From Macrostomum lignano (taxonomy: Eukaryota), in the NCBI GenBank assembly GCA_002269645.1, contig NIVC01000045.1, positions 372,001 to 436,000 on the forward strand: a DNA stretch of 64,000 nucleotides. The letters are read 5' to 3'. Positions 5,561-48,351 of the stretch are shown here, piece by piece. Position numbers and translations under genes: made by a program. Under the pieces are notes generated by a model. The model was not told where the DNA came from, did not search any database, and saw only the letters and a list, made by a program, of their open reading frames with translations. Each line of letters starts with the position of its first letter. Within the stretch, counting starts at the first letter, position 1.

Positions 5561-5562
<2 letters not shown>

Positions 5563-5569
5563 TTTTCAC

Positions 5570-6124: not shown

Positions 6125-6229
<105 letters not shown>

Positions 6230-10709: not shown

Positions 10710-10725
10710 GTATATATGACCGGCT

Positions 10726-11270: not shown

Positions 11271-11279
11271 TGTTTGTTG

Positions 11280-20475: not shown

Positions 20476-20592
20476 TCGGGTGGGAGAGGGTGGGTTTCAT
20501 ACTACTACAGAAAGTAGTTTGTCTTACGAAAACGAAGGCTTCGATTAGGAAAACGCTAAGAAGCTAGAATAGGAAGGGTGCGATTCAACATT

Positions 20593-20609
20593 CCGTAAAG
20601 ACGGTCTCT
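20593..20609 (+). ncRNA. 5' part of a spliced-leader RNA exon, interrupted by the retroelement array
   Basis: CCGTAAAGACGGTCTCT contains the CCGT...ACGG stem typical of flatworm SL 5' ends and matches the Macrostomum SL as I recall it (not verified by search). Confidence 0.65.
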
Positions 20610-21860
20610 AAGCTTGTCTAAGGGTTGTGCGCAATCCGATTGGCTATGCCAATTTCAAAGGGTCCGCCCCGGAGGGGCTGTGCCTGTTCTAAAAATAAAC
20701 CCTATTCTTTTTTCTAATTTCGGCCCTCGGCCTTGGTTTAGGGGGGGTGGTGCCCGGAGTGAGTTGGTTCTCTGGACTGCAGTGTGGCTAGGACGGGACT
20801 GAGCCCCCCGGTCGTACCCGCCCTGCAGGAAAGAAAATGACCAATTCACAAAGGTGTACGGTAGACCCAGTAGCATGCCAGCCCTGAGGCTGAGCACCCG
20901 GGCTGCAGGTCGGCAAGCTGCCTGCTCTAGGGCTATGGTGCTCCTCCCTTCTGCCAATCTTTTTTTCTGGGCTGGCATCCCAGCGCTGTTTTATCCCTAG
21001 CTTTGTGCCTTTGTGGCTTTTTATTCTTTTAATCTTTTATCTGGCCAATAGAAGCCTTCCAATTCTCGGAGTTATGAGCTCTGCCCTTGCCCGGTCCATC
21101 TTGCCCTGTCCTCGGGTCCATCTCCTGGCTCCTGCTGAAGGTCCCTGCTTGCGTGTCTCTGGCTCTCATCCTGACAGTGGATTGGTGTCCTGGGAAGGAT
21201 GTTCGTCCCGAACCGGGGACAACCGGCTGAGTCCGGAGTCCTCTTGCCCTGGGTGCCTCTTCTCCCGACCCCTTGGCCTGGCCCTCAATAATGAGCTGGA
21301 TAGGCGATGCCCTTGGGTTGGTAGCAATAGAGGTGTTGCCATGTCCGCCTAGAGTCTCCCCCTCGGATACAAGCCTTCCAGACTCACTCCAAAATAGAGC
21401 TGGGTAGTGAAAAGCCTTGAGGCTCGAGCCCTACAGTTGTCCAGTGCTGTTTAGGATCGCTCTTGGTAATTAGCTGCCCAGACTCGCTCCAATAGTTTAA
21501 GCCATTTCCGCAGGTTTAGGAGTAACTCCTCACTCGGACCGCTTTTTTCAGTAGTATTTCAAGCATTTCGCTTTCCAATTTTCTGCGCACTCCTAAAGAC
21601 TCGCTTGCTGGGGGGTGGCCTGGGTGGACTCGGTCCTAGCACCGTCCCTGATTCCACTGTTTGGGTTGGCGGTGTCTTGTACCGTAGGCTTGGGTCAACT
21701 CGCCCTTTCCCTAGCTTTAAGCTGGGTCCAATCCCAATGCATCCATGGGGTATCTCGGGCCCTGGACAGCTAATGCCTTGGCCCCTGGTAGTGCCCCTCT
21801 GCGGCAGAGCCCACCCCGGGCTGATCCGCGGGTAGCTAAGCTTCCCCCCCGTTTAACAAC
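20610..21860 (+). mobile_element. Array unit A: non-coding retroelement unit
   Basis: Starts at the SL motif and ends in the shared 3' hairpin module plus GTTTAACAAC. No recognisable protein domain. Confidence 0.6.
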
Positions 21861-21877
21861 AAAGACGGTCTCTTACT

Positions 21878-22182
21878 AGCTTTTCGCTCTCCAATTTTTC
21901 TGCGCACTCCCGAGGACTCGCTGGCTGGGGGGTGGCCTGGGTGGACTCGGTCCTAGCACCGTCCCTGATTCCACTGTTTCGGTTGGCGGTGTCTTGTACC
22001 ATAGGCTTGAAGTCCCTCGCCCTTTCCCTAGCTATAAGCTGGGTCCAATCCCAAGGTATCCATGGGGTATCTCGGGCCCTGGACAGCTAATGCCTTGGCC
22101 CCTGGTAGTGCCCCTCAGCGGCAGAGCCCACCCCGGGCTGATCCGCGGGCAGCTAAGCTTCCCACCCTCGTTTAACAACAAC
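21878..22182 (+). mobile_element. Array unit B: 5'-truncated copy of unit A
   Basis: Near-duplicate of ~21560-21860, bounded on both sides by AAAGACGGTCTCTTACT. Confidence 0.75.
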
Positions 22183-22222
22183 AAAGACGGTCTCTTACTG
22201 CGAAACCCCAATTTATTGCATG
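22183..22222 (+). ncRNA. Nearly complete SL exon sequence at the 5' end of the full-length LINE
   Basis: AAAGACGGTCTCTTACTGCGAAACCCCAATTTATTGCATG ends in ATG like flatworm SL exons, but is followed by ACC rather than a GT donor. Confidence 0.7.
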
Positions 22223-22379
22223 ACCGTCCGCGCGCGCGCAAAAATCTGCAAAGCAAAGAATTCCAAATTGCAACAAGGCCTGTGACTCTAATTGCCCATT
22301 GTTCTGCCTTCCACTAGTTCTTAACTTTGTGACAAGAGCTAATAGTCTTATTTTATAGTTAATAATAATATTAGCAGAA

Positions 22380-25349
22380 ATGAGCAAGCAGATCCCGCCT
22401 ACTAAAATTACGAAACCTTCCGGTCTTCCTGCGGCCAAGCGTGTCGATAACCGCTCATCGGTTGATAAGATGGAGGCCTTTGGCCGAAACCTGCTAGGCC
22501 TAGGCAAGAAACCAACACGGCCACCTGCTGGTCCCTCTGGCGCTGCAACTGCCTCTGGTGCTCCGAGCGCAGTTAGCAAAGAGCCCAATAGCAACAGGGC
22601 CTCCAGGAGTAGCGCAGACAGCATCCCGCCGGATGCCCCGTATAGTCTAGCAGCCATTAGCTGCCCGGCTGGTATGGACTGCGCACCAGCACCGCCATCG
22701 GACACGCCACCATCTCCTAGGGAAAAGGCTGAGGTAACTACGCCAGCTTCAATGCCAAATCCAGCCGAACTACCTGAGGTGCAATATTCTAATGACAACG
22801 CATCTACAAGACCAAAATCTCCGGTGCTTGCGATCCCAGCAGAGCAGCCAAAATCACCAGACGGCGCCATCTCCATATCGTCGGCAAGTAGCTCTGGCTC
22901 TGCGACTGTGTTGGAAGGGGCTGGCCAAGCCGGCTCCAAAGACCCCAACGCAGCCGCAGCAGCATCTGACTCTGTGTCTGAGGCAGACTCCGCGAACGCC
23001 GGCTGTGTTGATCTGGATGCTGAGGACGCAAGCATACCGTATGAAAATCCAATTGGCTTTCCAATAAGCGCGGACAAATCGGCACTTCAAGTCAAGCTGC
23101 CTAGCCAAGACGTACGGCTGGAGTATTACCCGAATATGCTCCGTAGCGTAGCCGCCGACGTCTATGACCGGTTGATCCAAGACCTCCTGCCTATTGCTAT
23201 ACGTCACCGGCCTCAGGAACAGCGACGAGTGGTGTGGTTCGGGCCGGAGTACTCTTACTCTGGAGTCCCGCTCGGCGCTAACAAAAAATGGCACCCGCTA
23301 GTTGAAGACATGAGAGACTACCTCGAGCTCAACGCGGACATTGGTGCATCAAAATTTAATAGCTGCCTCATAAACTTTTATGAAACGGCTGATGACTGCA
23401 TACCTTTCCACGCCGATAATGAACCCGAACTCGGCAGGGACCCTTTTATCGCTACGGTCTCCTTTGGTGCAGTACGCCAATTCCTAATTAAGAACAACGA
23501 GGACCAACGAATAGTAGCGCAATTCGAGACAAAGCCCGGCTCAGTGATAGTAATGTCCGGTGCATGCCAACGCAAATGTAAGCACAGTGTCCCAGGAGTC
23601 GGCGTCCAGGAGGGTGTACGCATTTCTCTCACCTTTAGGGTGACATATCCACCTGGCGTCGGCACGCCGGGACACGGAGGCCCGACTGCGGCAGCAGCAT
23701 TCGTTGGAGACGGGCCTGGCAGTGGCCGGGCGGGCACCAGCCTGGCTGCGCCGGGCTCCCGGACAGCTGCGACCAACGGGCAGCCAGGAGACTGCGGAGC
23801 AGCCGGCGCGTCTGGCTCTGCGGTCCCAGGCGGCCCACGAGCCCAGGGCAACGGCGGCGGCAGCGCCGGCGGTGCGGGGCGGGGCGGCAACCGTCGCTCC
23901 TATGCGACCATGGCGGCAAATCAGCAAAGACCACGACAACCTAATAGCAGTAATGTGGTGCCAGTGGTTTTCAACACAACAGCTGAAGCCAGCCAATTAG
24001 TATTTCTTAAGTGGCTCGCGGCCAACTTTCAAGGGTCGGCCCGAGCCACACTTACCAAATCATTAGCGCACGAATTTGGCTTCCTGGTTTTTCCGGCCAC
24101 GCCACGGGACCATCAAATTTTCCTGCGTGGGCCCCTGCGCGAGCCCCAGTTTGTCGGGGGTCCGGTTACTAGGAGGCTTCCGAAAGCTAGGCATGACCAA
24201 CAAGCGAGGCGGACTGCACCGCAGCGACCGATGACCCAGGAGATCCACTCTTTTGTCGTGCGCGGAGTGCCGCTCAACGTCAGTGCTGAAGACTTCAAGC
24301 GCCACCTGAAAGACAGTGCGGGCCTAAAAATTATCTCGGCTAGCCGCATTATTGCCAAAAGCAAAAATCAACCCACCTACCTGATGCGAGTCTTTGTCCA
24401 AAACAAGCAGACCGTGGACGCCTGTCTGGCAACAGGCATCATCACAGACTTCATAACGTACCAATGCGAGCCAAGCAGAACGGCGACTCCCGCCCGGGCT
24501 CCACAATGCCAAAAATGCCAGAGGTTCGGGCATCACGCCCAACGATGTAGAGCGGCCAAGCGCTGTCAAATCTGTGCGGCCGAGCATCACTGGCGTGAGT
24601 GCGACAGGCAAGATGCTGTCAAGTGCGCGAACTGCGGCGAGTCACACCGCGCTAATTATAGAAACTGCCAGGTAGCGATCGACAGCCACAGTGCGGCCCA
24701 AAGGCGTGCGGCTGCCTACGCAGCGGGCGCTCGTGAAGCCGCGGCTGGGACAGGCCAGTTGACCGCTCCACCATCAATGGCGGCAGCAGCGACAGCAGCA
24801 GCACCAGTATCGGCAGCGGCAGCAGCGGCGCCCCCCGCCCCCGCATTGAGACCAATATCGGCAGCGGCAGCAGCGGCGCCCCCCGCCCCCGCGCCGAGAC
24901 CAACATCGGCAGCAGTCCCGAGTTCGGCCGACGCTGCAGCACGGGCGCCAGCGGCGACAGGAGGCGACGATGACTCGTCCTGGCTCACCGGCCACGCCCT
25001 CCCTAGCCGGAAGCGCCCTGTGCGCGAATCGACCGACTCGGTATTGCAATCCACCGTGCCAAAAGCGACTCAAAACAATAATCCGCCGCCGAGTGTGAAC
25101 TTTGAACCGCTGATCCCAGGACTGGTGAGTGGGCTACTGCCTTGCCTGGTCCAAGCACTCGTAGAGGTGATTACGACGCTCTGGCCGAGTGCTGCCGAAC
25201 GGCCGCTTCCTACTGATGGCTCTGGTGACTCAGTGCCTGAAGTAGTGAGTAGGGTTCTGGCCCGTACACTCCAAGGAGCGTCGCTAAGTCATCAAAGCTC
25301 TGGTCAGCTATCGGGCGCTTTCCAGCGTCAGGCGGATGGCCGGACCTAG
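22380..25349 (+). CDS. LINE ORF1 (989 aa): disordered N-terminus, AlkB/2OG-Fe(II) dioxygenase, RRM-like region and three Cys/His zinc knuckles
   Basis: AlkB at ~23106-23645 with FNSCLINFY...FHAD (His 23409, Asp 23415), KHSVP (His 23583) and RISLTFR. Knuckles CQKCQRFGHHAQRC, CQICAAEHHWREC, CANCGESHRANYRNC. Confidence 0.92.
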   Translation: MSKQIPPTKITKPSGLPAAKRVDNRSSVDKMEAFGRNLLGLGKKPTRPPAGPSGAATASGAPSAVSKEPNSNRASRSSADSIPPDAPYSLAAISCPAGMDCAPAPPSDTPPSPREKAEVTTPASMPNPAELPEVQYSNDNASTRPKSPVLAIPAEQPKSPDGAISISSASSSGSATVLEGAGQAGSKDPNAAAAASDSVSEADSANAGCVDLDAEDASIPYENPIGFPISADKSALQVKLPSQDVRLEYYPNMLRSVAADVYDRLIQDLLPIAIRHRPQEQRRVVWFGPEYSYSGVPLGANKKWHPLVEDMRDYLELNADIGASKFNSCLINFYETADDCIPFHADNEPELGRDPFIATVSFGAVRQFLIKNNEDQRIVAQFETKPGSVIVMSGACQRKCKHSVPGVGVQEGVRISLTFRVTYPPGVGTPGHGGPTAAAAFVGDGPGSGRAGTSLAAPGSRTAATNGQPGDCGAAGASGSAVPGGPRAQGNGGGSAGGAGRGGNRRSYATMAANQQRPRQPNSSNVVPVVFNTTAEASQLVFLKWLAANFQGSARATLTKSLAHEFGFLVFPATPRDHQIFLRGPLREPQFVGGPVTRRLPKARHDQQARRTAPQRPMTQEIHSFVVRGVPLNVSAEDFKRHLKDSAGLKIISASRIIAKSKNQPTYLMRVFVQNKQTVDACLATGIITDFITYQCEPSRTATPARAPQCQKCQRFGHHAQRCRAAKRCQICAAEHHWRECDRQDAVKCANCGESHRANYRNCQVAIDSHSAAQRRAAAYAAGAREAAAGTGQLTAPPSMAAAATAAAPVSAAAAAAPPAPALRPISAAAAAAPPAPAPRPTSAAVPSSADAAARAPAATGGDDDSSWLTGHALPSRKRPVRESTDSVLQSTVPKATQNNNPPPSVNFEPLIPGLVSGLLPCLVQALVEVITTLWPSAAERPLPTDGSGDSVPEVVSRVLARTLQGASLSHQSSGQLSGAFQRQADGRT

Positions 25350-28235
25350 AAAAGTATAAAATAGAAATTTTCGGTAGTAACGGGCATGATGATAGCTCGA
25401 ACCCCACTGCCTCAGGGCTTAGGATCGCCCACCTAAACTGCAGGGGGATTATACCGAAACTAAAAGAACTCAGGCTCTGGGTCTCAGACCAAAAGTTGGA
25501 TATTGCTCTGTTCTCTGAGACCATCCTGAAAAATACCCAAGTATGCACTTTTCCGGGCTATGCTGCAGTGCGGTTTGATCTTCCAAACACGAAGCGTGGA
25601 CTCCTCCTTGTGCACACCCCTCGGGTAAAGGTAGCTGACGTCCAGCTCTCGTACGACAATGTCAACCATGAGGTCCTCACCTGCACAGTCACACCCGTTG
25701 ACGGTGCATGTCCACCTTTCCAACTCTCCCTGGTTTATCGGTCCCCATCGCCGGATAACCTCGACACAGGTCTTTTGACGAGGCTGTCCTCGGCCAAGCA
25801 CTCGCTCATCATGGGAGACCTAAATGCTAGACACAGCTTTTTGGGGGGCGAAAGTCGCAACAACAGAGCAGGACAGCAGCTCCATGATTGGCTCTGTGGC
25901 GATCCATCCCAACGCCCTACCGTTCTCAACCAACCAGGCCAGTTCACCAGAATAGCCCACCGGCAAGGCGCTGTGTCCCGGAATGTGCTTGACCTTGGGT
26001 TAGCCTCCGGTGACCTCGTCTCATATGTCCAAGACTTCAAGGTGGGCTCTGACCTGGACAGTGACCATCTCCCAATCATACTCACACTAGCGAGTAACTC
26101 CCCAGAGTGGCAAGGGCCGGATAAGGCCCGAAATTTTGCTAAAGCTAACTGGGAAGAGTTCCAAAACTCCCTGATGGAAAAGCTGGCAAACGCGTGGCCT
26201 CCAGACCTTAGTACTAGGCAGCAGATTGATGCGGAGGTCGACTTCATCACAAACGCGATCCAGAAAACCATTGAGGATAATGTCCCGGTCAGAAAAGGCC
26301 GTAGAGCACTCCCCCAAAGGATCATTGCCATGATCAAGGAGAGGAGGAAGCTCCGGCGTCTATACCACAGTACCAGGGAAGACAACTTTAGGCTGCTCGC
26401 GAATAGGAAGGCGAAGGAAATTAAAAGCGCTATCCATTCGTTTGAGCAGGGCCAGTTTACCCAATTGTGCGAGAAAATAGTTGAAAAAAGTCAATGCCGG
26501 AATGTCAAGGACTTCTGGCAAGACACAAAAAAATTGATGGGGCGTAAAAAGGGCACCACTATTCCGTCCTTGAACGATGGCGCCTCCCTCGCACATACTG
26601 ACTCGGACAAGGCGGAAATGTTGGCGAGTGCGCTAGATGCCAAAATGCGTCCGATCCCATCTACTGACGAGGATCTGAAGAAGCGGGTTGAGCAGGTCAT
26701 GAAGCTCCCCCTTTTCAGACCTGTCCCTCCGGGCGCCAAACCGCATATGGGCCACCCCCTGGAGGCTCCGTTCTCTGTTACAGACACCCTCTGGGAGCTG
26801 GACCATCTGAAAGTCGACAGTGCTCCGGGCCAAAGTTCCAAACTGCGTCCTTAAGCATGGCCTAGAGCCCATTGCGGTTACCCGCATTACCAAGCTCTTC
26901 AACGACTGTTATCGTACGGGCATCTTCCCATCGCAGTGGAAAAAAGCGGTGGTGACGATGATCCCTAAACCAGACAAACCGCCTGAGTCCCCGGGTTCCT
27001 ATCGGCCCATCAGCCTGACCTCCTGCCTCGGCAAGGTATTCGAGAAGTTATTGGTGAGGAGGCTGATGAAGCATCTTGAGGACCAAGGTATCCTCGGTGC
27101 GGACCAGTGCGCTTACAGGAAGGTCCACTCGACCTACGATAATCTCGTCCGCCTCGTCCAAGACGTCCAGGTGGGCAAAGCTAAACTCAAAAGGATCTTG
27201 GCCATACTCCTTGACGTACAAGCGGCGTTTGACTCGGTGTGGTATGACTACCTGCGTTTCAGGACTTTTGAAGTCAATACACCGGACGCCCTCGTCAGGA
27301 TCTGCTCCGACTATCTGGCAGACAGGCACATGCAGGTGAAGGTGAACGGGGCGCTCAGCCGGCCGTACGAATTGCAGGCAGGCGTCCCCCAGGGTGGCAT
27401 CTTAAGCCCTTTTCCTTTACCTGCTCTTCATCAGCACCATGCCTAGGCCGCAACAACCAAATCTTAAGCGAAGCCAATTCGCCGACGACATGGCGACATG
27501 GCTTCGGCGGACTCTTTTGCTGGCCTCAAAACGCTCCTGCAACCCTACCTCGACCGTGTGTGGAAATGGTGTCGGGGGCAGGGGATCAAAATCAACGCCA
27601 GCAAAAGCCAGGTTATCGCGTTTAACTATAAGCCAACTCAGCGGCTCGATCTTCGCCCCAAGCTGAAACTTGGTGGCACGAGCCTTGAGTACCAGGAAGA
27701 AGTCCGGTTCCTTGGTATGAACCTGGACTACAGGCTGACCCTCAACTCGCATATTGAAAGGGTAGTCAGCCATGGCAGGGCGCTTGCGCTATCCATCAAC
27801 CGCATTGCTAAACTAACCCGGCTAAGCAGCAATACACTAAAAATGCTATACAGGGCTTATGTTGAGAGTGCGCTGACGTACGGTGCCCCGGTGTTGAATA
27901 TTATAGCACCCAGTAATCTCAATAAGCTCCAAAAAATCTAAAACCTAGCCCTCCGGATCTGCTACGGTGCCCCCAGTTACACCCAGGTAGCCTACTTACA
28001 TGAGTTGGCAGCCATGCCGATGATGGCTGACAGGATCCGCGCCCTTTGCGTAGGCTGGCTCACGAAAGTGAAGGCTGCCGGGCACCATAACTTCCATATA
28101 GAACCGGAACTCCCAAGAGCTGCCCGAAACCGTCCCCCAGTGCTGAACCTGCTTTGGGACAGCCTGAAGAGGAGGCAGGTAAATAGACAAGCAGCTGCTA
28201 ATGCGGCAGCCCGTGCGGCCCGCAACCCGCCCTAG
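25322..28235 (+). pseudogene. LINE ORF2: apurinic endonuclease plus reverse transcriptase, with a few frameshifts and one stop
   Basis: LRIAHLNCRG, DIALFSET, IMGDLNARH, SDHLPI (APE); YRPISLTSCLGKVFE, LLDVQAAFDSVW, GVPQGGILSP, FADD (RT). It opens in the -1 frame relative to ORF1 with no nearby in-frame ATG. No RNase H recognised. Confidence 0.9.
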
Positions 28236-28865
28236 ACTTACTAGGTCGGCTACCCCACAGAACCTGGTGCGCCCCCAGACAGCGGCTAGCCCTTCTTTCC
28301 CATCCCATGGACCTGCAGGCTGTCAGTGCATGAATGAATAATTAGACCAAATTACTAAATAGGCGATGAATATTTAGCGGCGAGTGCTGGATCAGGCGGG
28401 GGTGCCTACGACCCAGTAACTAGGCAGTATAAGTAGCGATGCCGAACCGATGTACTGTGATCCGCCACCTACTTTTTCCGTATTCCGCCTTGCTTATATA
28501 ATTTTTCTTACAACCCAACTTTTATTTGCAATGCTGTTTTTACACCTGGCTTTTGCCCTGTTTTTATTTCAAATATTCGCGCTGATCCCCCTAAATAGGT
28601 CAAATTTATCTTTGTGAGGACCTGGCCCAAGCTAAATAGAGCACCCCACTATTAATCAGTTGCGACAAATACTTTTTTATTTATCCCAAAATGTAAATAG
28701 TTCAATATTAAGCGAATCTTTTATTAAATTTATTTTATTCTCTTTCGCTATACCAATATTCGCATTACCTTTTTTAATCAACATATTACATCGGCAGAGC
28801 CCTACCCGGGCTGATCCGAGAGTCCTACTTTGACTCGCTCGTTTAAAAAAAAAAGACGGTCTCTT

Positions 28866-29208
28866 CTAACTAACTAAATTATTTTATCACCTGGCTATAC
28901 TTGCAGTAGTCATTTTCAATTAATGCCAATACTACTCTAAATCTTAATTCAAGAATGCTTGCACTACCCCTTACAGTATGGTCCAGAGCTTTGTGAGGAC
29001 CCCCCCCCTCTATTCAGAAACTCCCCCTATTTTAGTGCAAATTAATCTTAATGAAGCCAAATGTAAATATTTTAAATACCAACTTGAAATTCTATTTTTA
29101 ATGCTTCGCCAACTAAATTCGTATATAAAATTAAAATAAATCGGCAGAGCCCATCTCGGGCTGATCCGAGGGTGCCTAACTTACACCCATTCGTTTAACA
29201 ACAACAAC
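28866..29208 (+). mobile_element. Array unit D: 3'-UTR-only insertion
   Basis: AT-rich ~340 bp ending in the shared hairpin module plus (AAC)4, bounded by AAAGACGGTCTCTT on both sides. Confidence 0.75.
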
Positions 29209-29222
29209 AAAGACGGTCTCTT

Positions 29223-32200
29223 CCGCGGAGCGGCCGGCGCGCCCGGCTCTGCAGTCCCTGGCGGCCCACGAGCCCAGGGCAACGGCGGCGGCAACGTCGG
29301 CGGTGCGGGGCGGGGCGGCTATCGCCGTTCCTACGCTGAAATGGCGGCGAATAACAACCAGGATGCATCACGGCCCCCGAACAATAACCGGGGAAGTAAT
29401 GTGGTACCAGTAGTGTTTAATACTGCGGCAGAAGCTAGTCAAATTGAGTTTCTAAAGTGGCTCGCGGCCAACTTCCAAGGGTCGGCCCGGGCTACACTCA
29501 CCAAAAAGTTGACTTATGAAGTCGGCTTCCTCGTGTTTCCGGCTACTCCGCGAGACCACCAGTTGTTCCTGCGTGGGCCTCTGCGCGAGACCCAGTTTGC
29601 TGGGGGGCCGGTAACGAGGCGTCTACCAAAGGCTCGACCGGACCCACGAGCTAGGCCTGCTGCGCCACAGCGACCCCGATGACCCGAGCGATCCACTCGT
29701 TCGTGGTGCGCGGCGTGCCTCAGGAGGTCGAGGCCAGCGACTTCAAGCGGCACCTGCAAGAGAGCGCGGGTCTTAATATTATATCAGCTAGCCGCATCAC
29801 TGCTAGGCGAGACAACAAGCCTACTAGCCTAATCAGAGTCTTTGTCCGTAACAAACAGACCGTTGATGCCTGTCTAGCCACAGGAATCGTTACGGATTTC
29901 ACAACCTACCAGTGCGAGCCAAACAGGACCGCAGCACCGGCACGAGCACCGCAGTGTCAAAACTGCCAGCGCTTCGGTCACCACGCCCAGAGGTGCAAGG
30001 CGGCCAAGCGTTGTCGGATCTGTGCGGCCGCGCACCACTGGCGAGACTGCGACAACCAAAATGCGGTAAAATGTGCGAACTGCAACGAGCCGCACAGAGC
30101 TAACTACCGCAACTGCCAGGTGGCGGTCGATTGCCACAGCGCGGCCCAAAGGCGTGTGGCTGCCTACGCAGCGGGCGCCCAGGAAGCCGCGGCTGAGATA
30201 GGCCGGTCGACCGCTCCACCACCTATTGCGGCAGTAGCGGCAGCAGTAGCACCAGCATCAGTAGCGGCAGTAGCGGCGTCCCCCGCCCCCGCATCGAGAC
30301 CAGCACCGGCAGCAGTCCCGAGTTCGGCCGACGCCGCAGCACGGGCGCCAACGGCGACAGGAGGCGATGATGACTCGTCCTGGCTCACCGGCCATGTCCT
30401 CCCAAGCCGGAAGCGCCCTGTGCGCGAATCGACCAACTCGGAATCGCAATCTACTGTGCCAAAAGTAACTCAAAATAACAATCCGCCGCCGAGTGTAAAT
30501 TTTGAACCGCTGATCCCAGGACTGGTGAGTGGGCTACTGCCTTGCCTGGTTCAAGCACTCGTAGAGGTGGTCAAGACGCTCTGGCCGAGTGCTGCCGAAC
30601 GCCAAAATGCGCCCGATCCCATCAACTGATGAAGATCTGAAGAAACGGGTTGAGCAGGCTATGAAGCTCCCCCTCTTTAGACCTGTCCCCCCGGGCGCAG
30701 AACCATACATGGGCCACCCCCTGGAGGCTCCTTTCTCTGTCACGGACACCCTCTTGGAGCTGGACCACCTAAAAGTAGACACTGCTCCGGGCCTGGACAA
30801 AGTTCGTAACTGCGTCCTTAAGCATGGCCTAGAGCCCATTGCGGTTACCCGCATTACCAAGCTCTTCAACGACTGTTATCGTACGGGCATCTTCCCATCG
30901 CAGTGGAAAAAAGCGGTGGTGACGATGATCCCTAAACCAGACAAACCGCCTGAGTCCCCGGGTTCCTATCGGCCCATCAGCCTGACCTCCTGCCTCGGCA
31001 AGGTGTTCGAGAAGTTATTGGTGAGGAGGCAGATGAAACATCTTGAGGACCAAGGTATCCTCGGTGCGGACCAGTGCGCCTACAGGAAGGTCCATTCGAC
31101 TTACGACAATCTTGTCCGCCTCGTTCAAGACGTCCAGGTGGGCAAAGCCAAACTAAAAAGATTGCTGGCCATTCTCCTTGACGTACAAGCGGCGTTTGAC
31201 TCGGTGTGGTACGACTACCTGAGGTTCAGGATGTACGAAGTCAACTCACCGGACGCCCTCGTCAGGATCTGCTCTGACTATCTAGCAGACAGGCTAATGC
31301 AGGTGAAGGTTAACGGAGCACTTAGTCAGCCGTACGAGTTGCAGGCGGGTGTCCCACAGGCCTGCAACAGGATGGAGTCGTCAGGATGGAGTCCCATCCC
31401 GAGCCCTTTCCTTTACCTGCTCTTCATCAGCACCATGCCTCGGCCAGGACAACCAAACCTTAAGCGAAGCCAATTCGCCGACGACATGGCCATCTGGGCC
31501 TCGGCGGACTCTTTTGCTGGCCTCAAGACACTCTTGCAACCTTCCTAGATCGCGTGTGGAAATGGTGTGGGGGGCAGGGGATCAAGATCAACGCCGGCAA
31601 GAGTCAGGTCATCGCGTTTAACTACAAGCTTACCCAGCGGCTCGACCTCCGCCCCAAGCTGAAACTTGGTGGCACGAGCTTTGAATACCAAGATGAAGTC
31701 CGGTTCCTTGGTATGAACCTGGACTACAGGCTGACTCTTAACTCGCATGTTGAAAGAGTAGTCAGTCATGGCCGGGCACTTGCGCTTTCCATCAACCGCA
31801 TTGCTAAACTGACCCGACTAAGCAGTAACACCCTAAAAATGCTCTACAGGGCTTATGTTGAGAGTGCGCTGACCTACGGTGCCCCGGTGCTGAATATTAT
31901 TGCACCCAGTAACCTCAATAAGCTCCAAAAAATCCAAAACCTAGCTCTCAGGATCTGCTATGGTGCCCCCAGTTACACCCAGGTAGCCTACTTACATGAG
32001 CTGGCAGCCATGCCTATGATGGCGGATAGGATTCGCGCCCTAGGCGTGGGCTGGCTCACCAAAGTGAAGGCTGCTGGGCACCATGACTTCCACATAGAAC
32101 CGGAACTCCCTAGAGCTGCCCGAAACCGCCCCCAGTGCTGAACCTGCTATGGGACAGCCTGAAGAGAAGGCAAGCAAATAGACAAGCAGCTGCGTATGCG

Positions 32201-33003
32201 GCGGCCCGTGCGGCCCAGAACCCGCCGTAGATCTGCTAGTTCAGCTGTTCCAATATATGGGTGCGCCCCCAAACAGTGGCTTGCCCCTCTTTCTCCTCTG
32301 TGAGGATCAATCCTCTGTCAGCGCACAATCAAACAAACCAAAATATTCAATAGGCGTAGAATAATGCGGCGAGTGCTGGACCAGGTGGGGGTGCCTACGA
32401 CCCAGTAACTATACAGTAAGAATTGCTGTGCCTACCTGTTAGTACTGCTGATGATACTGTGATCCGCCGCAGACCTCTTCCTGACTCCGCCTCTCTTTGC
32501 CTTTTTACAATCGAATTATTTTAAACTGCAAATGCTTCTTTTACACCTGGCTTTTGCCTTGCTTATATTTTTACTCTTCTTTTTATCCTAACCCAAATAT
32601 ACAAATAATGCTTCTTACATAAACTTTTAGTTATATGTGCCAACGAGGCCAATCCAATATATTTCGTGTAGGGGCTGCTACTAGTAGTAGTTCCTGCCGC
32701 ATAGCTATTATATTATTTTTTACTAAATACAAATATTTGAATACTGATTTAAAACCTTCGCGCTGATTCCCCTTTCGGTCCAAAATATCTTTGTGAGGAC
32801 CCGTCCCAATTTCTGTAGAGTTCCCCCTCTATCAGTTGCGACCACTTCTTTATTTTTATTCCTAAATGTAAATAATTAATTTAAATCGAATATTTTAACT
32901 CTCGTATAACCAATACTTAGCAAACTTTTTTTTAATTTAAATATATCGGCAGAGCCCTACCCGGGCTGAACCGAGGTGTCTTCAGCACCACTCGTTTAAC
33001 AAC
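29223..33003 (+). mobile_element. Array unit E: 5'-truncated, internally deleted LINE (ORF1 C-terminal half joined to RT; APE missing)
   Basis: Starts just downstream of AlkB. The junction at 30600/30601 joins unit-C-equivalent 25200 to ~26639. RT, 3' UTR and (AAC) tail are present. Confidence 0.88.
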
Positions 33004-33013
33004 AAAGACGGTC

Positions 33014-36000
33014 CTGCTGTGTTGGAAGGAGCTGGCCAAGCCGGCTCCGAAGACCCCAACGCAGCCGCAGCAGCATCTGAATCTGATTCTGCCTCCGTGG
33101 CGGATTCTGCGCGCGACGTCAACGTTGACCTAGATGCCGAGGACATTAGCTTACCTTACGAGAACCTAATCGCTTTTCCAAGAGGCGCAGACAAGTCCGG
33201 CATGATATCTAAGTTGTCCAGCCAAGACTTCCGCCTGGTCTACTATCCTAATATGCTACGCAGTGTTGCCATCGATGTTTATGACAGGCTAGTTCAAGAC
33301 CTTCTTCCAATTGCTGTGAGACATCGGCCCCAGGAACAGCGTCGAGTTGTGTGGTATTGCCCGGAGTATTCTTATTCCGGTGTCCCGCTTGGCGCTAACC
33401 TGAAGTGGCACCCATTAGTAAAGGTTATGCGAGATTATCTAGAGCTCAATGCAGACATAAACGCACCTAAATTCAATAGCTGCCTCATTAATTTCTACGA
33501 ATCGGCAGATGATTGTATACCATATCATGCCGATAACGAGCCAGAGCTTGGCCAAGACCCCTTCATTGCTACGGTCTCCTTCGGAGCCGTGCGCCAATTC
33601 TTGGTAAAAAATAACGAGGATCAGCGTGTAATTGCCCAATTTGAGACCAACCCCGGCTCGGTGATCGTAATGTCGGGAGCCTGTCAGCGAAGATGTAAGC
33701 ACAGTGTCCCAGGAGTCGGCGTCCAGGAGGGTGTACGCATCTCACTCACCTTTAGGGTGACCCATCCACCTGGCGTCGGCACACCGGGGCACGGAGGCGC
33801 GACAGCGGCAGCAGCACCCGTCGGGGATGGGCCTGGCAGAGGCGGGGCGGCTCCAGTCCTGCTACGTCGGGCCCCCGGACGAGCGTGGCGACCGGGCAAC
33901 CAGGCAGCAGTGGGGCGGCCGGCGCGCCCGGCCCTGCTGCGCTTGGCAGTTCCCGCAACCAAGTCCAAGACCGTAGCAGCAATGTTGGTGCGGGGCGCGG
34001 TGGCGCAGCTCAACGGCCTAACGTCCAAGGGCGCTCATATGCGTCAGCTGCGGGTCAGAATATTAATAATCAAATTAGGAATAATAATAATAATGCTGCA
34101 CCAGGCCGGCAGAATGTAGTGCCGGTCGTCTTTACCTTCGACGGCGACACCGGCGACAGCAGCTTCAGCCAAATTAGCTTCCTCAAATGGTTGGCGTCAA
34201 ACTTCCAGGGCAACGCCCGAGCTACGCTGATCATCAGATCTTCCTCCGAGGGCCGCTGAGGGAGCCGCACATAAATGGTGTACCAGTTAACCGTAGACTG
34301 CCTAATGCCAGAACAACGTATAACAGACCCGCTGACCGGCAACCTCCAGTCCAATCGGTGCACTCGGTAGTAGTCCGGGGAGTGCCGGTCGAGATTGAGA
34401 TGCCGGCGTTCATTCAGCACCTGCGGGAGGACGTGGGCTTGAAGATCATCTCCGCGAGCCGCATCACGTCACGAGCGCGCAACTAGCCGACTCACCTCGT
34501 CCGCCTATTTCTACCAAATAAAGCCACTGCGGATGCTTGCCTGGCGACAGGCATCGTATCGCAGTTCACGAGGTATGCCTGCGAACAAAGCAAGACGGCT
34601 GCTCCGGCTAGGGCGCTCCAGTGCCATAAGTGCCAGCGTTTCGGCCACAGCGCGAATCTGTGTCGTGCTGCTCCGCGCTGCAACATCTGTGCGGCGGCGC
34701 ACCGCTGGCAGAAGTGCCCGAACCCGGACGCGGCCAAATGTGCGAACTGTGGCGAGGCCCATCGAGCCAATCACAGGAACTGCCCTGTAGCTGCTTAGAA
34801 ACACAGCCAGGCGGCCCGGCGCGCTGCAGCCTACCAAGCCGGCGCCCGGGAAGCCATGGCAGCAGGGCAAGCAGCAGCTTTGCCACCAGTATCAGCAGCA
34901 GCAGTGATTGAGCGAGCTGCACCAATAGCAGCGCAGGCGACGGCAGCAGCAGCAGCGCCACCCGCCCCCGCACCAAGACCAGCTTCGGCGACTGCGCCTA
35001 GACCAACTGAGACCGCTGCACGGGCGCCAACGGCTACGGGGGTCACCGACGATGACTCGACCTGGCTTACAGGCCGTGGCCTCCCTAGTCGAAAGCGCCC
35101 TGTGCGCGACTCGGTTGACTCTGCGACCCAGACGCAGCCGCCAAGTGACCAGCCGCCTAGTATGCTCGCTGCCATGGAAGCTACGGTAAGTGGGCTCTTC
35201 CCCAAGCTGGTACAAGCACTCGTAGAGGTGCTTACGATCCTCTCACCGAGCCTAGTCGAACGGCCGCCTGCTACTGAAGGTACCGGTCAAACGGTGCCAG
35301 ATGTAGTAGGTAGGGTTCTGACCTGGGTCCTCGCGGGGGGATCGGAAAGTCACCAAGGCTCTGGTCAGCTGCTTGGCGCCCCCCTGGCGGCAGGCGGATA
35401 ACCAGACCTAGAATATAAAGTGAATAATAATCTTCGGTGATAATGAGCAAGATAGTTCCAACCCCACTGTCTTAGGGCTTAGGATCGCCCACCTAAACTG
35501 CAGGGGGATTATACCGAAGCTAAAAGAACTTAGGCTCTGGGTCTCAGAAAACAGCGCCACATCTAACTTTTGGTCTGAGACCATTCTGAAAAATACCCAA
35601 GTATGTAAATTTCCGGGCTATGCTGCAGTGCGGTTTGACCTTCCGAATACGAAGCGCGGACTCCTCCTTGTTCACTCCCCACGGGTTAAGGTAGCTGACG
35701 TCCAAGCTCTCGTATGACAACATCAACCATGAAGTTCTTACCTGCACGGTCACGCCTCTTGACGGAGCTTGCCCTGCATTTCATCTGGCCTTGATTTATC
35801 GGTCCCCATCGCCGGACAACCTTGATGTCGGTCTGATGACTCGGCTGTCTTCGGTCAAGTACTCTCTTATAATGGGTGACCTCAACGCCAGGCTCAGCTT
35901 TTTGGGGGGCGAGAGTCGCAACAACAGGGCTGGTCAACAGCTTCACGATTGGCTCTGCGGCGACCCCATCCATCGTCCCACCGTCCTTAACCAACCAGGT

Positions 36001-36436
36001 CAGTTCACCAGGATTGCCCACAAGAATGGTACGGTCTCTCGGAATGTGCTGGACCTTGGTCTGGCCTCCGGTGACCTAGTCCCCTTTATCCAGGACTTCA
36101 AAGTGGGTGACGACCTAAATAGCGACCACCTTCCAATTGTTCTCACTCTGGCGAACAACTCCCAGATTGGCAAGGGCCGGAGAAGGCTCGCAACTTTGCC
36201 AAAGCCAACTGGGAGGAGTTCCAGAACTCGCTAATGGAAAAACTGATTGACGCGTGGCCTCCCGACCTCAACACTAGGCAGCAAATTGACGCGGAGGTCG
36301 ACATTATTACAGGCGCCATCCAGGAAACTGTTGAGCAAAATTTCCCGGTCAGAAAAGGCCGTAGAGCCCTCCCCCAGAGGATCATTGCTATGATCAAGGA
36401 GAGGAGGAGGCTCCGGCGACTGTACCACAGTACCAG
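33014..36436 (+). mobile_element. Array unit F: 5'-truncated sister LINE with AlkB, zinc knuckles and APE, cut off by Gypsy sequence
   Basis: AlkB at ~33220-33760 with HAD at 33526-33534, KHSVP and RISLTFR intact. Knuckles at ~34620-34790; APE at ~35480-36200. Homology to unit C stops at 36436. Confidence 0.88.
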
Positions 36437-39400: not shown

Positions 39401-39970
39401 AGTATGGTGTACCAGCGTGGCTGCACACTGACCAAGGAACGAATTTCACTGGAAAAGACTTTAAGAAGTTTTGTGAGCTGTACGGCATTAGGCACACGAC
39501 CACAACGCCTTATAATCCTAGTTCGAATGGCCAGGTGGAAAATCTCAACAAGACAATCAAGAGTGTACTCACGTGCCTGCTGGAGAAGAATCTTTAAGAT
39601 TGGGACACCTTCCTCCCAGCATGCATGATCGCCTTGCGATCTCGCGTTCACCCAGTTACAGGGTTTACGCCCTACTTCTTGGTCTTTGGAAGAGAATTCC
39701 GGATGCCCATGGATAATGAGCTTCGGGTCCCACCTGAGTATCCGGACTTGCCAACGTACGTCCAAGACTTCCAGAAGAGACTGGAGGAGGCTAACAAGTT
39801 AGCTCAGGACCGAGTAAAGCTGCATCAGGAACTTCGCGATGAGCATTATGAGAATCGCCCGAAGGCCAAACAACTTTCGCCTGGAGACTTAGTCTTCTTG
39901 AACAACCCAGTCTTAGATCAGTCTTGGGAAGCGCAGAAATTTCACAGGCTGTGTATGAAGTAGTAGAGCG
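36437..39970 (+). mobile_element. Ty3/Gypsy pol region (RT, RNase H, integrase), element 1, 5'-truncated
   Basis: YSSPILVVPKKD, LDLAQGFYQI, YMDDIVI, VLDCDASG, RTDHRAL; integrase H...H...C..C, CDVVGP, HTDQGTNF, GQVENLN. Confidence 0.92.
38390..38550 (+). repeat. Three ~60-bp tandem repeats encoding SCC/TCC-x-SVxR between RNase H and integrase
   Basis: CATGTTGT(C/T)CCTCAGTG(G/A)ACCG occurs three times. Confidence 0.75.
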
Positions 39971-40283
39971 CAAAGGAGAAGTAGTTTACAAGATCAGACC
40001 TCGCCTCCAGAACCCTAGGGCTCGTCGAGAGGAGTTGATGGTGCACCGTCGCAATATGCTACCGGTTCCGCAAGCTGACTATCCAGAGCCAGCTGGCCGG
40101 GTAGCTGAGCACCGTGTTGGGCCGCCGCGTAAGCGTCGCGTTGCCGTAGAAACCACCGCCTCTTAGAATACCGGCGAAGCCGCCGATGACAAGCTCGATG
40201 ACGATGATGATGACTGGGCTCCGCGCTACTTTCTGCATCCGGCCGCAGCGCTAGCAGCGATCCCAGAAGTCGTCGAACCTGAA

Positions 40284-43246: not shown

Positions 43247-43479
43247 ATCCCTCACAGTCTGTAGCCTCACAACCTGTAAATAGCAGCGATTAATTTTTCT
43301 GTAAATAGTGAATTGAATTCGTCAGTGTATAACAGTAGGCATTCGCAAACATTTAATCAATCACTTAATCAGCCAAACATTTATTCTCAGCACTTTTCAA
43401 ACGCACCACAACAGCAACCTTATTCTAGTGAGCAGCAGCTAAAACAACCAAAAATAAATGAACAAACTAAAAAGCAAAG

Positions 43480-48350: not shown

Positions 48351-48351
48351 A

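What the first reader, a model, noticed from the sequence alone, without database searches (positions are those of the whole stretch)
20593..36436. Head-to-tail array of six LINE units inserted sequence-specifically into a spliced-leader exon
Seen: every junction carries the same target: 20597-20609 (preceded by CCGT), 21861-21877, 22183-22222, 28852-28865, 29209-29222 and 33004-33013. Each completed unit ends ...GTTT(AAC)n or An immediately before AAAGACGGTC. Each next unit starts after a variable length of the target, at different 5' truncation points. This is the pattern expected from repeated target-primed reverse transcription at one site with target duplication. Knowledge: the motif matches the flatworm SL exon (Macrostomum SL recalled from memory). 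The SL-targeting elements I know (NeSL, CRE/SLACS/CZAR) use a restriction-like endonuclease, while APE-type site specificity is known from the R1 and Tx1 clades. Inference: an SL-specific APE-type LINE with I/Jockey-like ORF1 would be an independent origin of SL targeting. I cannot confirm it is undescribed.
Basis: partly seen in the sequence, partly recalled or inferred. Interest (0 to 1): 0.92.

Follow-up and report, generated by a model that had tools for sequence, protein, structure and literature searches.

The report
Flatworm LINE array in spliced-leader gene
Six dead copies of a jumping gene (a LINE retrotransposon) from different subfamilies have landed one after another at exactly the same base of a flatworm spliced-leader RNA gene. 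A sister family in Macrostomum lignano does the same in U5 snRNA genes, so this looks like an apparently undescribed group of LINEs that home to small-RNA genes and carry an unusual AlkB repair or demethylase domain.

Summary
AAAGACGGTC occurs exactly six times, all on the + strand at the stated coordinates. Five follow a LINE 3' end (conserved double hairpin, CGTTTAAC(AAC)n or A11). The first follows CCGT and non-LINE DNA. CCGT plus the 40-nt piece at 22183-22222 matches the published M. lignano spliced leader at 41 of 44 bases. A promoter box found upstream of M. lignano U5 genes lies about 70 bp upstream.

The six units differ in 5' truncation point and subfamily (74-93% identity), so they are separate insertions, not duplications. 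ORF2 is an apurinic-type endonuclease plus reverse transcriptase, with no RNase H or restriction-like nuclease.

A sister family in M. lignano (ORF2 about 60% identical) forms the same arrays in U5 genes at two loci, at ACT^AAAGA. The SL site is CGT^AAAGA. There, the U5 piece ahead of full-length copies is carried by the element RNA. The 40-nt SL piece ahead of the only full-length unit, ending exactly at the exon end, is therefore probably RNA-borne too.

Not resolved: RT clade, genome-wide census, origin of the leader. All copies here are dead. Verdict: a new variant of site-specific APE LINEs; interest 0.72.

The parts
20522..20541 (+). PSE-like promoter box (CTTACGAAAACGAAGGCTTC) about 70 bp upstream of the SL start
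   Evidence: The same box YTTAYGAAAACGAAKGYTT lies at about -75 of two M. lignano U5 genes. It is the only GAAAACGAA in the window.
20593..20609 (+). SL exon nt 1-17 (CCGT + AAAGACGGTCTCT): resident start of the SL RNA gene, broken after nt 17 by unit A
   Evidence: SL consensus from PMC5173321.
20610..21860 (+). Unit A: 1251 nt, non-coding. Either the 3' part of a divergent subfamily or a non-autonomous partner. Ends in the double hairpin + CGTTTAACAAC.
   Evidence: Only the last ~60 nt match units C/D. 93% identical to unit B.
21861..21877 (+). Target copy, SL nt 5-21 (17 nt)
21878..22182 (+). Unit B: 305-nt 3' fragment of the A subfamily, tail (AAC)3
22183..22222 (+). SL nt 5-44, running to the last base of the exon (..TTTATTGCATG). 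It is the leader ahead of the only full-length unit.
   Evidence: By analogy with the RNA-borne U5 leader in M. lignano.
22223..28851 (+). Unit C: full-length LINE. 5'UTR 22223-22379, ORF1, ORF2, 3'UTR 28236-28840, A11 tail.
22380..25349 (+). ORF1 of unit C, 989 aa, intact
23214..23639 (+). AlkB-type 2OG-Fe(II) dioxygenase domain within ORF1. The HxD, H, NxY and RxxLTFR motifs are kept.
   Evidence: Pfam PF13532, E=2e-22. Alignment with bacterial AlkB. Motif coordinates.
24507..24668 (+). CCHC triad CX2CX4HX4C / CX2CX3HX4C / CX2CX3HX6C within ORF1
   Evidence: The pattern is as in Jockey-clade helena (PMC2330053) and locust elements (PMC3391268). Also present in units E and F.
25340..28235 (+). 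ORF2 of unit C (APE + RT), disrupted. Frameshifts near 26840, 27415 and 27500; stop at 27939-27941. Overlaps the ORF1 end in the -1 frame, with no in-frame ATG nearby.
28792..28851 (+). 3' terminal RNA module of unit C: invariant hairpin 1, variable hairpin 2, CGTTT + A-rich tail. Equivalent modules lie at 21802-21860, 22119-22182, 29142-29208 and 32947-33003.
28852..28865 (+). Target copy, SL nt 5-18 (14 nt)
28866..29208 (+). Unit D: 343-nt 3'UTR fragment of another subfamily, tail (AAC)5
29209..29222 (+). Target copy, SL nt 5-18 (14 nt)
29223..33003 (+). Unit E: starts in mid ORF1 (matching 23794 of C). It has an internal deletion matching C 25201-26625, so the ORF1 end, the APE and part of the linker are lost. 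Tail (AAC)2.
33004..33013 (+). Target copy, SL nt 5-14 (10 nt)
33014..36436 (+). Unit F: starts in ORF1 (matching 22906 of C), 74-77% identical to C, many frameshifts. Cut off inside ORF2 at 36436.
36437..41252 (+). Boundary, not part of the array: Ty3/gypsy pol fragment (RT-RNaseH-integrase) that replaces the rest of unit F and the rest of the SL gene

Best explanation
The region is a disrupted spliced-leader RNA gene of a Macrostomum-type flatworm. It has been hit at least six separate times, at the same phosphodiester bond, by members of one family of APE-type LINEs.

Inferred mechanism: the element's apurinic-type endonuclease nicks the bottom strand opposite T4^A5 of the SL exon. On the top strand this reads CCGT^AAAGACGG; on the bottom strand 5'-..GTCTTT^ACGG. 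The T-rich 3' end that is released pairs with the A-rich end of the LINE RNA (..CGUUUAAC(AAC)n or An). The reverse transcriptase, which recognises the conserved double hairpin just upstream of the tail, copies the RNA. A second nick 10-17 bp downstream gives a short duplication of SL nt 5-14 to 5-21 ahead of 5'-truncated copies. The copy of the target that follows each tail is still a good substrate even though AAC now precedes it instead of CCGT, so later elements insert again and a head-to-tail array grows.

Full-length RNAs carry SL nt 5-44 as a 5' leader. That leader lets the end of the cDNA anneal to the target and rebuilds a complete SL exon in front of the element. A copy inserted in a virgin SL gene would therefore be transcribed from the SL promoter as an mRNA that already starts with the spliced leader.

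Shown: same-site insertion, short variable duplications, independent subfamilies, the APE+RT architecture, the conserved 3' structure, the sister family in U5 genes, and that the U5 leader is RNA-borne. Inferred: the exact nick, the priming by pairing, the RNA-borne nature and the use of the SL leader.
For: Six exact target copies lie at the stated sites. The SL identity is 41/44 to the published M. lignano SL. A PSE-like box is shared with M. lignano U5 genes at matching distance.

The units differ in truncation point and subfamily: A/B 93%, C/E 78-85%, C/F 74-77%, and D is unrelated apart from the last ~70 nt. All five 3' ends of the family in the window abut the target. E's 14-nt target copy cannot derive from F's 10-nt copy, so at least one insertion used a site preceded by a LINE tail (inference).

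ORF2 is PF14529 APE + RVT_1 and nothing else, including in intact relatives. The 3' double hairpin is kept in five units and in two other families with compensatory changes: AGCCC/GGGCU, AGUUC/GAACU, AGCCCC/GGGGCU. Hairpin 2 is different in every subfamily but always paired.

In M. lignano, six 3' junctions at two loci are all CGTTTTAAC(AAC)n|AAAGATTTCC, inside U5 loop I (Rfam U5, 83.8 bits). In L117 the U5 3' half ahead of each LINE is a different variant from the resident U5 3' half after the last tail, so the leader travels with the element.
Against: The right end of the array and the SL intron and Sm site are missing. There is only one full-length copy, so the 40-nt leader could still be a long duplication that happens to end at the exon boundary. 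CRE-type elements do make duplications (PMC3636483). The bases shared by the SL and U5 sites (T^AAAGA) are too few to explain the specificity. The SL here differs from the M. lignano SL at nt 27-30 and its use in trans-splicing in this species is not shown. All copies are dead, so activity is historical.
Confidence: 0.8

Rival explanations
1. The array arose by tandem duplication or unequal crossing-over of a single LINE-plus-target unit, without any site-specific insertion.
For: The arrangement is head-to-tail with the same short sequence at every junction.
Against: The units have six different 5' ends, four or more subfamilies at 74-93% identity, unrelated 3'UTR bodies and different tail lengths. 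Duplicated units would share their ends and their sequence.
Confidence: 0.02
2. The SL pieces are not a target. They are relics of trans-spliced LINE mRNAs that were reverse transcribed, as in the recycled cDNAs with leader relics known from dinoflagellates, so the element has no SL specificity.
For: TE transcripts can be trans-spliced: about 30% of Hydra TE Iso-Seq reads carry an SL (PMC12220107). The piece ahead of the full-length unit ends exactly at the exon end.
Against: Truncated units keep the 5' part of the leader (nt 5-14 to 5-21), not the 3' part that would adjoin a splice acceptor. Their start points lie inside ORF1 or the 3'UTR. The first copy is continuous with CCGT and a promoter box in non-LINE DNA. 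The U5 sister family cannot be explained by trans-splicing.
Confidence: 0.05
3. The array comes from one or a few insertion events in which the reverse transcriptase jumped end-to-end between several LINE RNAs. Each RNA was a read-through transcript ending in a variable stretch of SL sequence, so the array did not grow by repeated visits to the site.
For: End-to-end template jumping is known for the R2 RT (cited in PMC4494074). It would also give tail + a variable piece of target + a truncated next unit.
Against: It needs several different subfamily RNAs, all with read-through ends, in one particle. Target pieces of 10-17 nt are the usual size of APE-LINE duplications. The M. lignano arrays consist of full-length units, which fits repeated insertion more simply.
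Confidence: 0.08
4. The endonuclease has only a loose L1-like preference (TCTTT^A). This locus is a chance hotspot or TE graveyard rather than a specific target.
For: The SL and U5 sites share only T^AAAGA. The window is full of other TEs.
Against: TAAAGA occurs 48 times in the window, yet all five 3' ends of the family sit at the one site that continues as SL. All six M. lignano 3' junctions sit at one U5 position at two loci.
Confidence: 0.05

Closest known systems
NeSL-1 (nematodes) and CRE1/CRE2, SLACS, CZAR (trypanosomatids)
   Same: They are site-specific LINEs that insert inside the spliced-leader exon of SL RNA genes. CRE-type elements also make target duplications (PMC3636483, PMC4640811).
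   Different: They have a single ORF with a restriction-like PD-(D/E)XK endonuclease after the RT and belong to the early-branching R2 group. The element here has an N-terminal APE, two ORFs and no RLE. Their hosts are nematodes and kinetoplastids, not flatworms. From memory, not checked here: SLACS and CRE insert at nt 11/12 of the exon with a 49-bp duplication.
Tx1-clade target-specific LINEs (Keno in U2 snRNA genes; Tx1 families in U5 snRNA and 5S rRNA genes)
   Same: They are APE-type LINEs that home to small-RNA genes, including U5 (PMC4494074).
   Different: From general knowledge, Tx1 is an L1-group clade with a long ORF2 and a C-terminal zinc-finger region. The ORF2 here is about 945 aa, ends about 160 aa after the RT, and gives no zf-RVT or other C-terminal hit. 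The ORF1 triad is of Jockey/I type. No SL-specific Tx1 family came up in the literature I could search.
R1 clade (R1, R6, R7, TRAS, SART, Waldo, Mino)
   Same: They are APE-type, strictly site-specific, have two ORFs with ORF1 CCHC knuckles, and rely on a 3' RNA structure and on pairing of the RNA end with the nicked target.
   Different: Their targets are rDNA, telomeric repeats and microsatellites. From general knowledge, the R1-clade ORF2 has a Cys-His motif after the RT, which is absent here. The APE profile scores lower on TRAS1 EN (25.8 bits) than on L1 EN (40 bits) and does not reach R1Bm EN.
Jockey-clade LINEs (e.g. helena, jockey)
   Same: The ORF1 CCHC triad is identical in pattern. 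ORF2 is of about 900-950 aa with APE + RT only and overlaps the end of ORF1. The tail is A-rich (PMC2330053).
   Different: From general knowledge, Jockey-clade elements are described from arthropods, are not site-specific, and have no AlkB domain. The RT phylogeny was not done.
AlkB domains in other selfish elements (orchid Ty3/gypsy; plant Flexiviridae replicases)
   Same: A 2OG-Fe(II) AlkB-type domain has been captured by an RNA-based replicator. The orchid domain was shown to bind RNA and demethylate m6A (PMC9289625).
   Different: Here the domain sits in the ORF1 (RNA-coating) protein of a LINE in an animal. Its nearest relatives outside flatworms are bacterial AlkB at about 40% identity.
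R2/R1 co-transcripts and U6-L1 chimeras
   Same: Host RNA sequence at the 5' end of the retrotransposon RNA or cDNA ends up at the 5' junction. In R2 it helps join the 5' end by homology. In L1 it arises by template switching to snRNA (PMC4494074, PMC3636483).
   Different: Here the leader seems to be a stable, inherited part of the element: the same U5 variant is present in all M. lignano copies at two loci. For the SL family it would re-create a functional-looking spliced leader.

Membership tests
APE-type non-LTR retrotransposon (LINE) | Apurinic/apyrimidinic-type endonuclease N-terminal to a reverse transcriptase in ORF2 | tested here: met
   PF14529 (45 bits) and PF03372 followed by RVT_1 in unit C. 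The same order is seen in intact ORF2s of M. lignano and L107.
APE-type non-LTR retrotransposon (LINE) | Hallmarks of target-primed reverse transcription: variable 5' truncation, short target duplication, A-rich or simple-repeat tail | tested here: met
   Six different 5' ends, 10-17 nt target copies, (AAC)n or A11 tails.
Site-specific LINE | Most or all copies in a genome lie at one sequence | tested here: inconclusive
   In the window, 5 of 5 3' ends are at the SL site. In M. lignano, 6 of 6 are at the U5 site. No genome-wide census was possible. One old related ORF1 fragment at 9346-11290 has no SL next to it.
NeSL / CRE (RLE-type SL-specific LINEs) | Restriction-like PD-(D/E)XK endonuclease C-terminal to the RT, single ORF, no APE | tested here: not met
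   ORF2 begins with an APE and ends about 160 aa after the RT with no further domain. There are two ORFs.
R1 clade | RT groups with R1/TRAS/SART in a phylogeny | not testable with these tools
   No reference LINE RT set was available. The PDB holds only the TRAS1 and R1Bm EN domains.
R1 clade | Endonuclease close to TRAS1/R1Bm EN; Cys-His motif after the RT | tested here: not met
   TRAS1 EN 25.8 bits against L1 EN 40 bits; R1Bm EN is not hit. There is no Cys-His motif in the ORF2 C-terminus. The motif as a clade feature is taken from general knowledge.
Tx1 clade | L1-group ORF2 with a C-terminal zinc-finger region; RT groups with Tx1 | tested here: not met
   No zf-RVT or other C-terminal hit; ORF2 is only about 945 aa. 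The RT phylogeny was not done.
Jockey clade / I-Jockey group | ORF1 with the triad CX2CX4HX4C, CX2CX3HX4C, CX2CX3HX6C | tested here: met
   Found at 24507-24668 and in units E and F. The pattern is as described in PMC2330053 and PMC3391268.
Jockey clade / I-Jockey group | RT groups with the Jockey clade in a phylogeny | not testable with these tools
   No reference set was available. The architecture (APE+RT only, about 945 aa) is compatible.
AlkB family 2OG-Fe(II) dioxygenase | Profile match above the curated cut-off, with the iron ligands HxD...H and the 2OG-binding NxY and RxxxxxR | tested here: met
   PF13532, 80.8 bits against a cut-off of 31.2. H344/D346, H402, N/Y 332-334 and R414...R420 are invariant with bacterial AlkB. 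Enzyme activity was not tested.
Flatworm spliced-leader RNA gene | Exon matching the leader found on trans-spliced mRNAs | tested here: met
   41/44 identical to the M. lignano SL consensus, differing at nt 27-30. Use of this exact variant in the source species was not tested.
Flatworm spliced-leader RNA gene | snRNA-type promoter upstream; splice donor and Sm site downstream | tested here: inconclusive
   A promoter box is shared with U5 genes at about -70. The donor, intron and Sm site are absent because the gene is interrupted and its 3' part is not in the window.

The most novel reading that the evidence does not exclude
Macrostomid flatworms harbour an undescribed lineage of APE-type LINEs with three linked features. 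Their ORF1 has captured a bacterial-type AlkB dioxygenase. Their families each specialise on a different Pol II small-RNA gene (SL RNA, U5 snRNA, perhaps a third). Their specificity and expression depend on an RNA-borne leader copied from the target. Under this reading the endonuclease only needs TCTTT^A. The leader, and the AAAGA-compatible 3' end, guide or lock the particle onto the matching gene, so a family can switch target by swapping leader. Insertion 4 nt after the SL start rebuilds a promoter-driven LINE mRNA that begins with a genuine spliced leader.
Probability: 0.25. Interest if true: 0.9.

Novelty: new variant of a known kind. Interest (0 to 1): 0.72.

Why it matters
Spliced-leader genes were known as LINE targets only for restriction-like-endonuclease elements of nematodes and trypanosomatids. 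An APE-type family doing the same in flatworms is a clean case of convergent homing to a safe, multicopy, highly transcribed gene.

The pair of sister families (SL here, U5 in M. lignano; ORF2 about 60% identical; same T^AAAGA core) offers a natural experiment on how an APE LINE changes target. It also allows a test of whether host-RNA leaders carried by the element take part in targeting, 5' joining and expression.

The AlkB domain in ORF1 suggests that repair or demethylation of the element's own RNA matters for a LINE, as proposed for plant viruses and shown for an orchid LTR element.

On the practical side, M. lignano is a transgenic model. A site-specific retrotransposon with a defined small target could be of use as an integration tool.

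Tried and rejected
**Searches that failed or found nothing**
Only the AlkB segment search worked. As a result there was no named RT relative and no census.
- An exact look-up of ORF1 found nothing. P0002, the closest relative at 68-72% identity, and P0169 are not on record.
- The metagenome scan for the 3' hairpin gave 105 loci, all chance bacterial matches with no LINE tail.
- Rfam found no SL RNA, ribozyme or snRNA in the window at gathering or relaxed thresholds. It found nothing in the Logan contigs either.
- The literature search found no paper on an SL-specific APE LINE, on Macrostomum LINEs, or on AlkB in a LINE ORF1. This is absence in an open-access subset only. No supplement was held for the Tx1 paper. 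The SRA run numbers were not found in papers.

**Tests that were inconclusive**
- The PDB sequence search with the APE piece alone gave nothing. A three-sequence profile hit L1 ORF2p, R2, L1 EN and TRAS1 EN, but this does not resolve the clade.
- Pfam at relaxed E-values found no RRM or other domain in the rest of ORF1.

**Ideas rejected**
- That 22223 onward is SL intron: it does not start with GT, and it continues into ORF1.
- That the window is M. lignano itself: shared repeats are only 72-85% identical, and the best M. lignano ORF1 hit is 50%.
- That the end of the L118 array is clearly the founder U5 gene: its U5 variant pairs less well with the 5' half than the resident variant in L117, so this stays open.

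Full report
**1. The observation**

A search for AAAGACGGTC finds exact matches at 20597, 21861, 22183, 28852, 29209 and 33004, all on the + strand. None of 100 dinucleotide-preserving shuffles reaches the observed number of hits. I read the junctions directly and measured them against the longest copy.

| Junction | Preceded by | Target kept | Followed by |
|---|---|---|---|
| 20597 | CCGT | 13 nt | unit A |
| 21861 | CGTTTAACAAC | 17 nt | unit B |
| 22183 | CGTTTAAC(AAC)2 | 40 nt | unit C |
| 28852 | CGTTT + A11 | 14 nt | unit D |
| 29209 | CGTTTAAC(AAC)4 | 14 nt | unit E |
| 33004 | CGTTTAACAAC | 10 nt | unit F |

BLAST against unit C gives the unit map.

| Unit | Coordinates | Content |
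|---|---|---|
| A | 20610-21860 | 3' part only |
| B | 21878-22182 | 3' part only |
| C | 22223-28851 | full length |
| D | 28866-29208 | 3'UTR only |
| E | 29223-33003 | starts in mid ORF1; internal deletion |
| F | 33014-36436 | starts in ORF1 at the position matching 22906 |

At 36436 unit F stops against a Ty3/gypsy pol fragment (RT, RNase H, integrase). Neither the rest of F nor any further SL sequence is found downstream.

**2. The target is a spliced-leader gene**

The published M. lignano leader is CCGTAAAGACGGTCTCTTACTGCGAAGACTCAATTTATTGCATG (PMC5173321). CCGT at 20593-20596 plus the 40-nt copy at 22183-22222 gives CCGTAAAGACGGTCTCTTACTGCGAAACCCCAATTTATTGCATG. That is 41 of 44 identical, with the differences confined to nt 27-30. 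The insertion site lies between nt 4 and 5 of the exon.

About 70 bp upstream of CCGT lies CTTACGAAAACGAAGGCTTC (20522-20541). Nearly the same box sits about 75 bp upstream of two M. lignano U5 snRNA genes. GAAAACGAA occurs nowhere else in the window. So this is an snRNA-type gene with its promoter in place and CCGT at or next to +1.

The first target copy is continuous with this non-LINE DNA.

Repeats shared between the window and the M. lignano loci are only 72-85% identical. The best M. lignano match to ORF1 is 50%. The source is therefore probably another Macrostomum species.

**3. The element**

- **ORF1 of unit C** (22380-25349, 989 aa) is intact.
- **ORF2** is open from 25340 in the -1 frame. 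It is broken by frameshifts near 26840, 27415 and 27500 and by a stop at 27939-27941.
- **ORF2 domains:** Pfam gives an APE (PF14529 and PF03372) followed by RVT_1. Intact relatives (944 aa in M. lignano, 950 aa in Logan contig L107) show the same two domains and nothing else. There is no RNase H, no C-terminal zinc finger and no restriction-like nuclease.
- **ORF1 zinc knuckles:** ORF1 holds the triad CX2CX4HX4C, CX2CX3HX4C, CX2CX3HX6C at 24507-24668, also kept in units E and F. This is the pattern described for Jockey-clade helena and for locust I/Nimb/Jockey-type elements.
- **AlkB domain:** The iron ligands (HxD, H) and the 2OG-binding residues (NxY, RxxLTFR) are all conserved with bacterial AlkB.
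- **Clade:** not resolved. A profile of three ORF2s scores best on human L1 ORF2p, the only APE LINE with a full structure. On the endonuclease-only entries it scores 40 bits on L1 EN and 25.8 bits on TRAS1 EN, and it does not reach R1Bm EN. By architecture the element is Jockey-like, but I had no reference RT set for a phylogeny.

**4. Separate insertions, not duplication**

| Pair | Identity |
|---|---|
| A and B | 93% over 303 nt |
| C and E | 78% in ORF1, 85% in ORF2 (97% in one 300-nt stretch) |
| C and F | 74-77% |
| D and the others | only the last ~70 nt match |
| A/B and C/D/E | only the last ~60 nt match |

With six different 5' ends and different tail lengths, the units must come from at least four subfamilies and from separate events.

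E is preceded by 14 nt of target and F by 10 nt. E's 14 nt therefore cannot come from the copy made when F inserted. At least one insertion used a target copy preceded by a LINE tail rather than by CCGT, so recognition lies mainly 3' of the nick (inference).

**5. A conserved 3' RNA module**

All five complete 3' ends share CGGCAGAGCCC-N5-GGGCTGAWCCG. It folds as a hairpin with an internal loop. A second hairpin follows whose sequence differs in each subfamily but always pairs: GGG.AGC/GCU.CCC, GAGUC/GACUC, GGGUG/CACCC, GGUGU/GCACC. Then come CGTTT and the tail.

The M. lignano family and the L107 family fold the same way, with compensatory changes in the inner stem (AGUUC/GAACU and AGCCCC/GGGGCU) and in the outer stem. 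This is what one expects of the structure recognised by a stringent-type LINE RT. The motif occurs five times in the window, always next to the SL target. TAAAGA occurs 48 times.

**6. The sister family in M. lignano**

The AlkB segment of ORF1 led to the M. lignano protein BOX15_Mlig027759g7 and from there to three stretches of the M. lignano assembly. These hold head-to-tail arrays of a LINE with the same ORF1 and ORF2 make-up. ORF2 is 55-62% identical and the ORF1 parts 43-50%.

Rfam identifies a complete U5 snRNA gene immediately ahead of the first copy (83.8 bits). All six 3' junctions, at two loci, read CGTTTTAAC(AAC)n|AAAGATTTCCGTGG. This places the insertion in U5 loop I at CGCCTTTTACT^AAAGATTTCC.

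The SL and U5 sites share T^AAAGA. On the bottom strand that is TCTTT^A, an L1-like nick that leaves a T-rich primer for the A-rich RNA end.

Every full-length copy is preceded by U5 from AAAG to its 3' end, always as the same variant (..GGAGGGATACTCTTAGGAG..). In locus L117, however, the array ends in a different and better-pairing variant (..GGAGAGGAACATTCAATGAG..). The U5 piece ahead of the copies is therefore not a duplication of the local target. It travels with the element RNA.

**7. The 40-nt SL piece**

The only full-length unit in the window is preceded by SL nt 5-44, ending exactly at the last base of the exon. The next bases (ACCGTCC..) are not a splice donor and continue as the 5'UTR into ORF1.

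By analogy with the U5 family, I read this as an RNA-borne leader. The exact stop at the exon end also points that way. Its origin is open. It could be trans-splicing of an ancestral LINE transcript (TE transcripts are trans-spliced in Hydra). It could be template switching. It could be a founder duplication inherited through transcription from the SL promoter.

A leader of this kind would let the 3' end of a full-length cDNA anneal to the target top strand and prime second-strand synthesis. After insertion 4 nt behind the SL start it would yield a transcript that begins with a complete spliced leader. These last steps are inference.

**8. Rivals**

- **Tandem duplication** is contradicted by section 4.
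- **Leader relics from trans-spliced mRNAs without SL specificity** is contradicted in three ways. The truncated units keep the 5' and not the 3' part of the leader. The first copy is continuous with the promoter. The U5 family cannot be explained this way.
- **A single event with serial template jumps** between read-through RNAs cannot be excluded, but it needs more assumptions.
- **A loose TCTTT^A preference with a chance hotspot** is contradicted by 5 of 5 and 6 of 6 junctions at one site.

**9. Comparison with what is known**

SL-specific LINEs are known from the CRE and NeSL clades. Both are RLE-type and early branching. APE-type site specificity is known from the R1 and Tx1 clades, and Tx1 families that target U2, U5 and 5S genes exist.

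The element here works like those. It fails the architectural tests I could apply for Tx1 and R1, and it matches Jockey-type architecture. I found no report of an APE-type SL-specific LINE or of AlkB in a LINE ORF1. AlkB is known in an orchid Ty3/gypsy lineage. I could not consult Repbase or Dfam, so the family may already be deposited there.

**10. Limits**

A metagenome scan gave only chance hits. There is no census of the source genome, no transcript evidence and no RT phylogeny. All six copies in the window are dead. The M. lignano family has intact ORF2s and may be active.

**Verdict**

It is a new variant of a known kind (site-specific APE LINEs) with three additions: an AlkB domain, a sister family in U5 genes, and an RNA-borne target-derived leader. 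Interest 0.72.

Noticed in passing
window 23214-23639 (unit C), 33154-33810 (unit F); L001, L117, L118, L107-L116: LINE ORF1 proteins carry an AlkB-type 2OG-Fe(II) dioxygenase domain with all catalytic residues kept. Its nearest non-flatworm relatives are bacterial AlkB at about 40% identity. Only about half a dozen 50%-identity clusters among 1.8 billion proteins combine AlkB with the ORF1 RRM/CCHC region.
   Followed up: partly
window 62902-64000 (+), runs off the window end: A third, intact-looking AlkB-domain ORF (38% aa identity to unit C; Pfam E=2.7e-28) belongs to a different element. Its upstream region shares a palindromic motif (CCTACTATCGGTAG) with the tail of the gypsy fragment at 41313, so it may not be a LINE.
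   Followed up: partly
window 9346-11290 (+): A degenerate ORF1 fragment of a related LINE (60% aa identity in the AlkB part). It is interrupted by a Tc1/mariner-like piece with inverted ends (about 10262-10700) and a GIY-YIG-like piece (about 9590-9830). No SL sequence lies next to it.
   Followed up: partly
L001 9666-9781; L117 1122-1240 and 12115-12185; L118 16046-16153: M. lignano U5 snRNA genes are occupied by arrays of the sister LINE. There are two U5 variants, one carried by the element and one resident. The L118 array ends in the element-type U5 3' half plus 25 nt of 'LINE 5'UTR', then unrelated DNA. This could be a founder locus or a deletion.
   Followed up: partly
L113 1-44 and L107 1-30 (Logan contigs, SRR31628403 / SRR31628392, organism unknown): Two different AlkB-LINE families begin with the same sequence ..AC|AAAGTTGATAAAACACCTTTTTTTGCAATTTTGACTCT and then diverge. 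This may be a third small-RNA target that also starts with AAAG. Rfam and the literature search did not identify it.
   Followed up: partly
window 36437-41252 and 42258-44700+: A Ty3/gypsy pol fragment (RT, RNase H, integrase, then a 322-aa ORF with no Pfam hit) is followed by the gag-protease-RT of a second LTR retroelement. No LTR pair was found in the window.
   Followed up: partly
window 19695-20400 (+): The reading frames look like a P-element/THAP9-type transposase remnant directly upstream of the SL promoter region. This is judged by eye only.
   Followed up: no
window 25340-25420 and 35380-35470: ORF2 overlaps the ORF1 end in the -1 frame and has no in-frame ATG near its start in units C and F. 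The nearby ATGs are out of frame. This suggests frameshifting or coupled re-initiation.
   Followed up: no
window 48297-49291; 14876-15791; 5442-6228: There are satellite arrays with units of about 23 nt and 22 nt, and long (CT)n tracts. The 13.4-16.3 kb repeats have 72-85% relatives in M. lignano locus L117.
   Followed up: no
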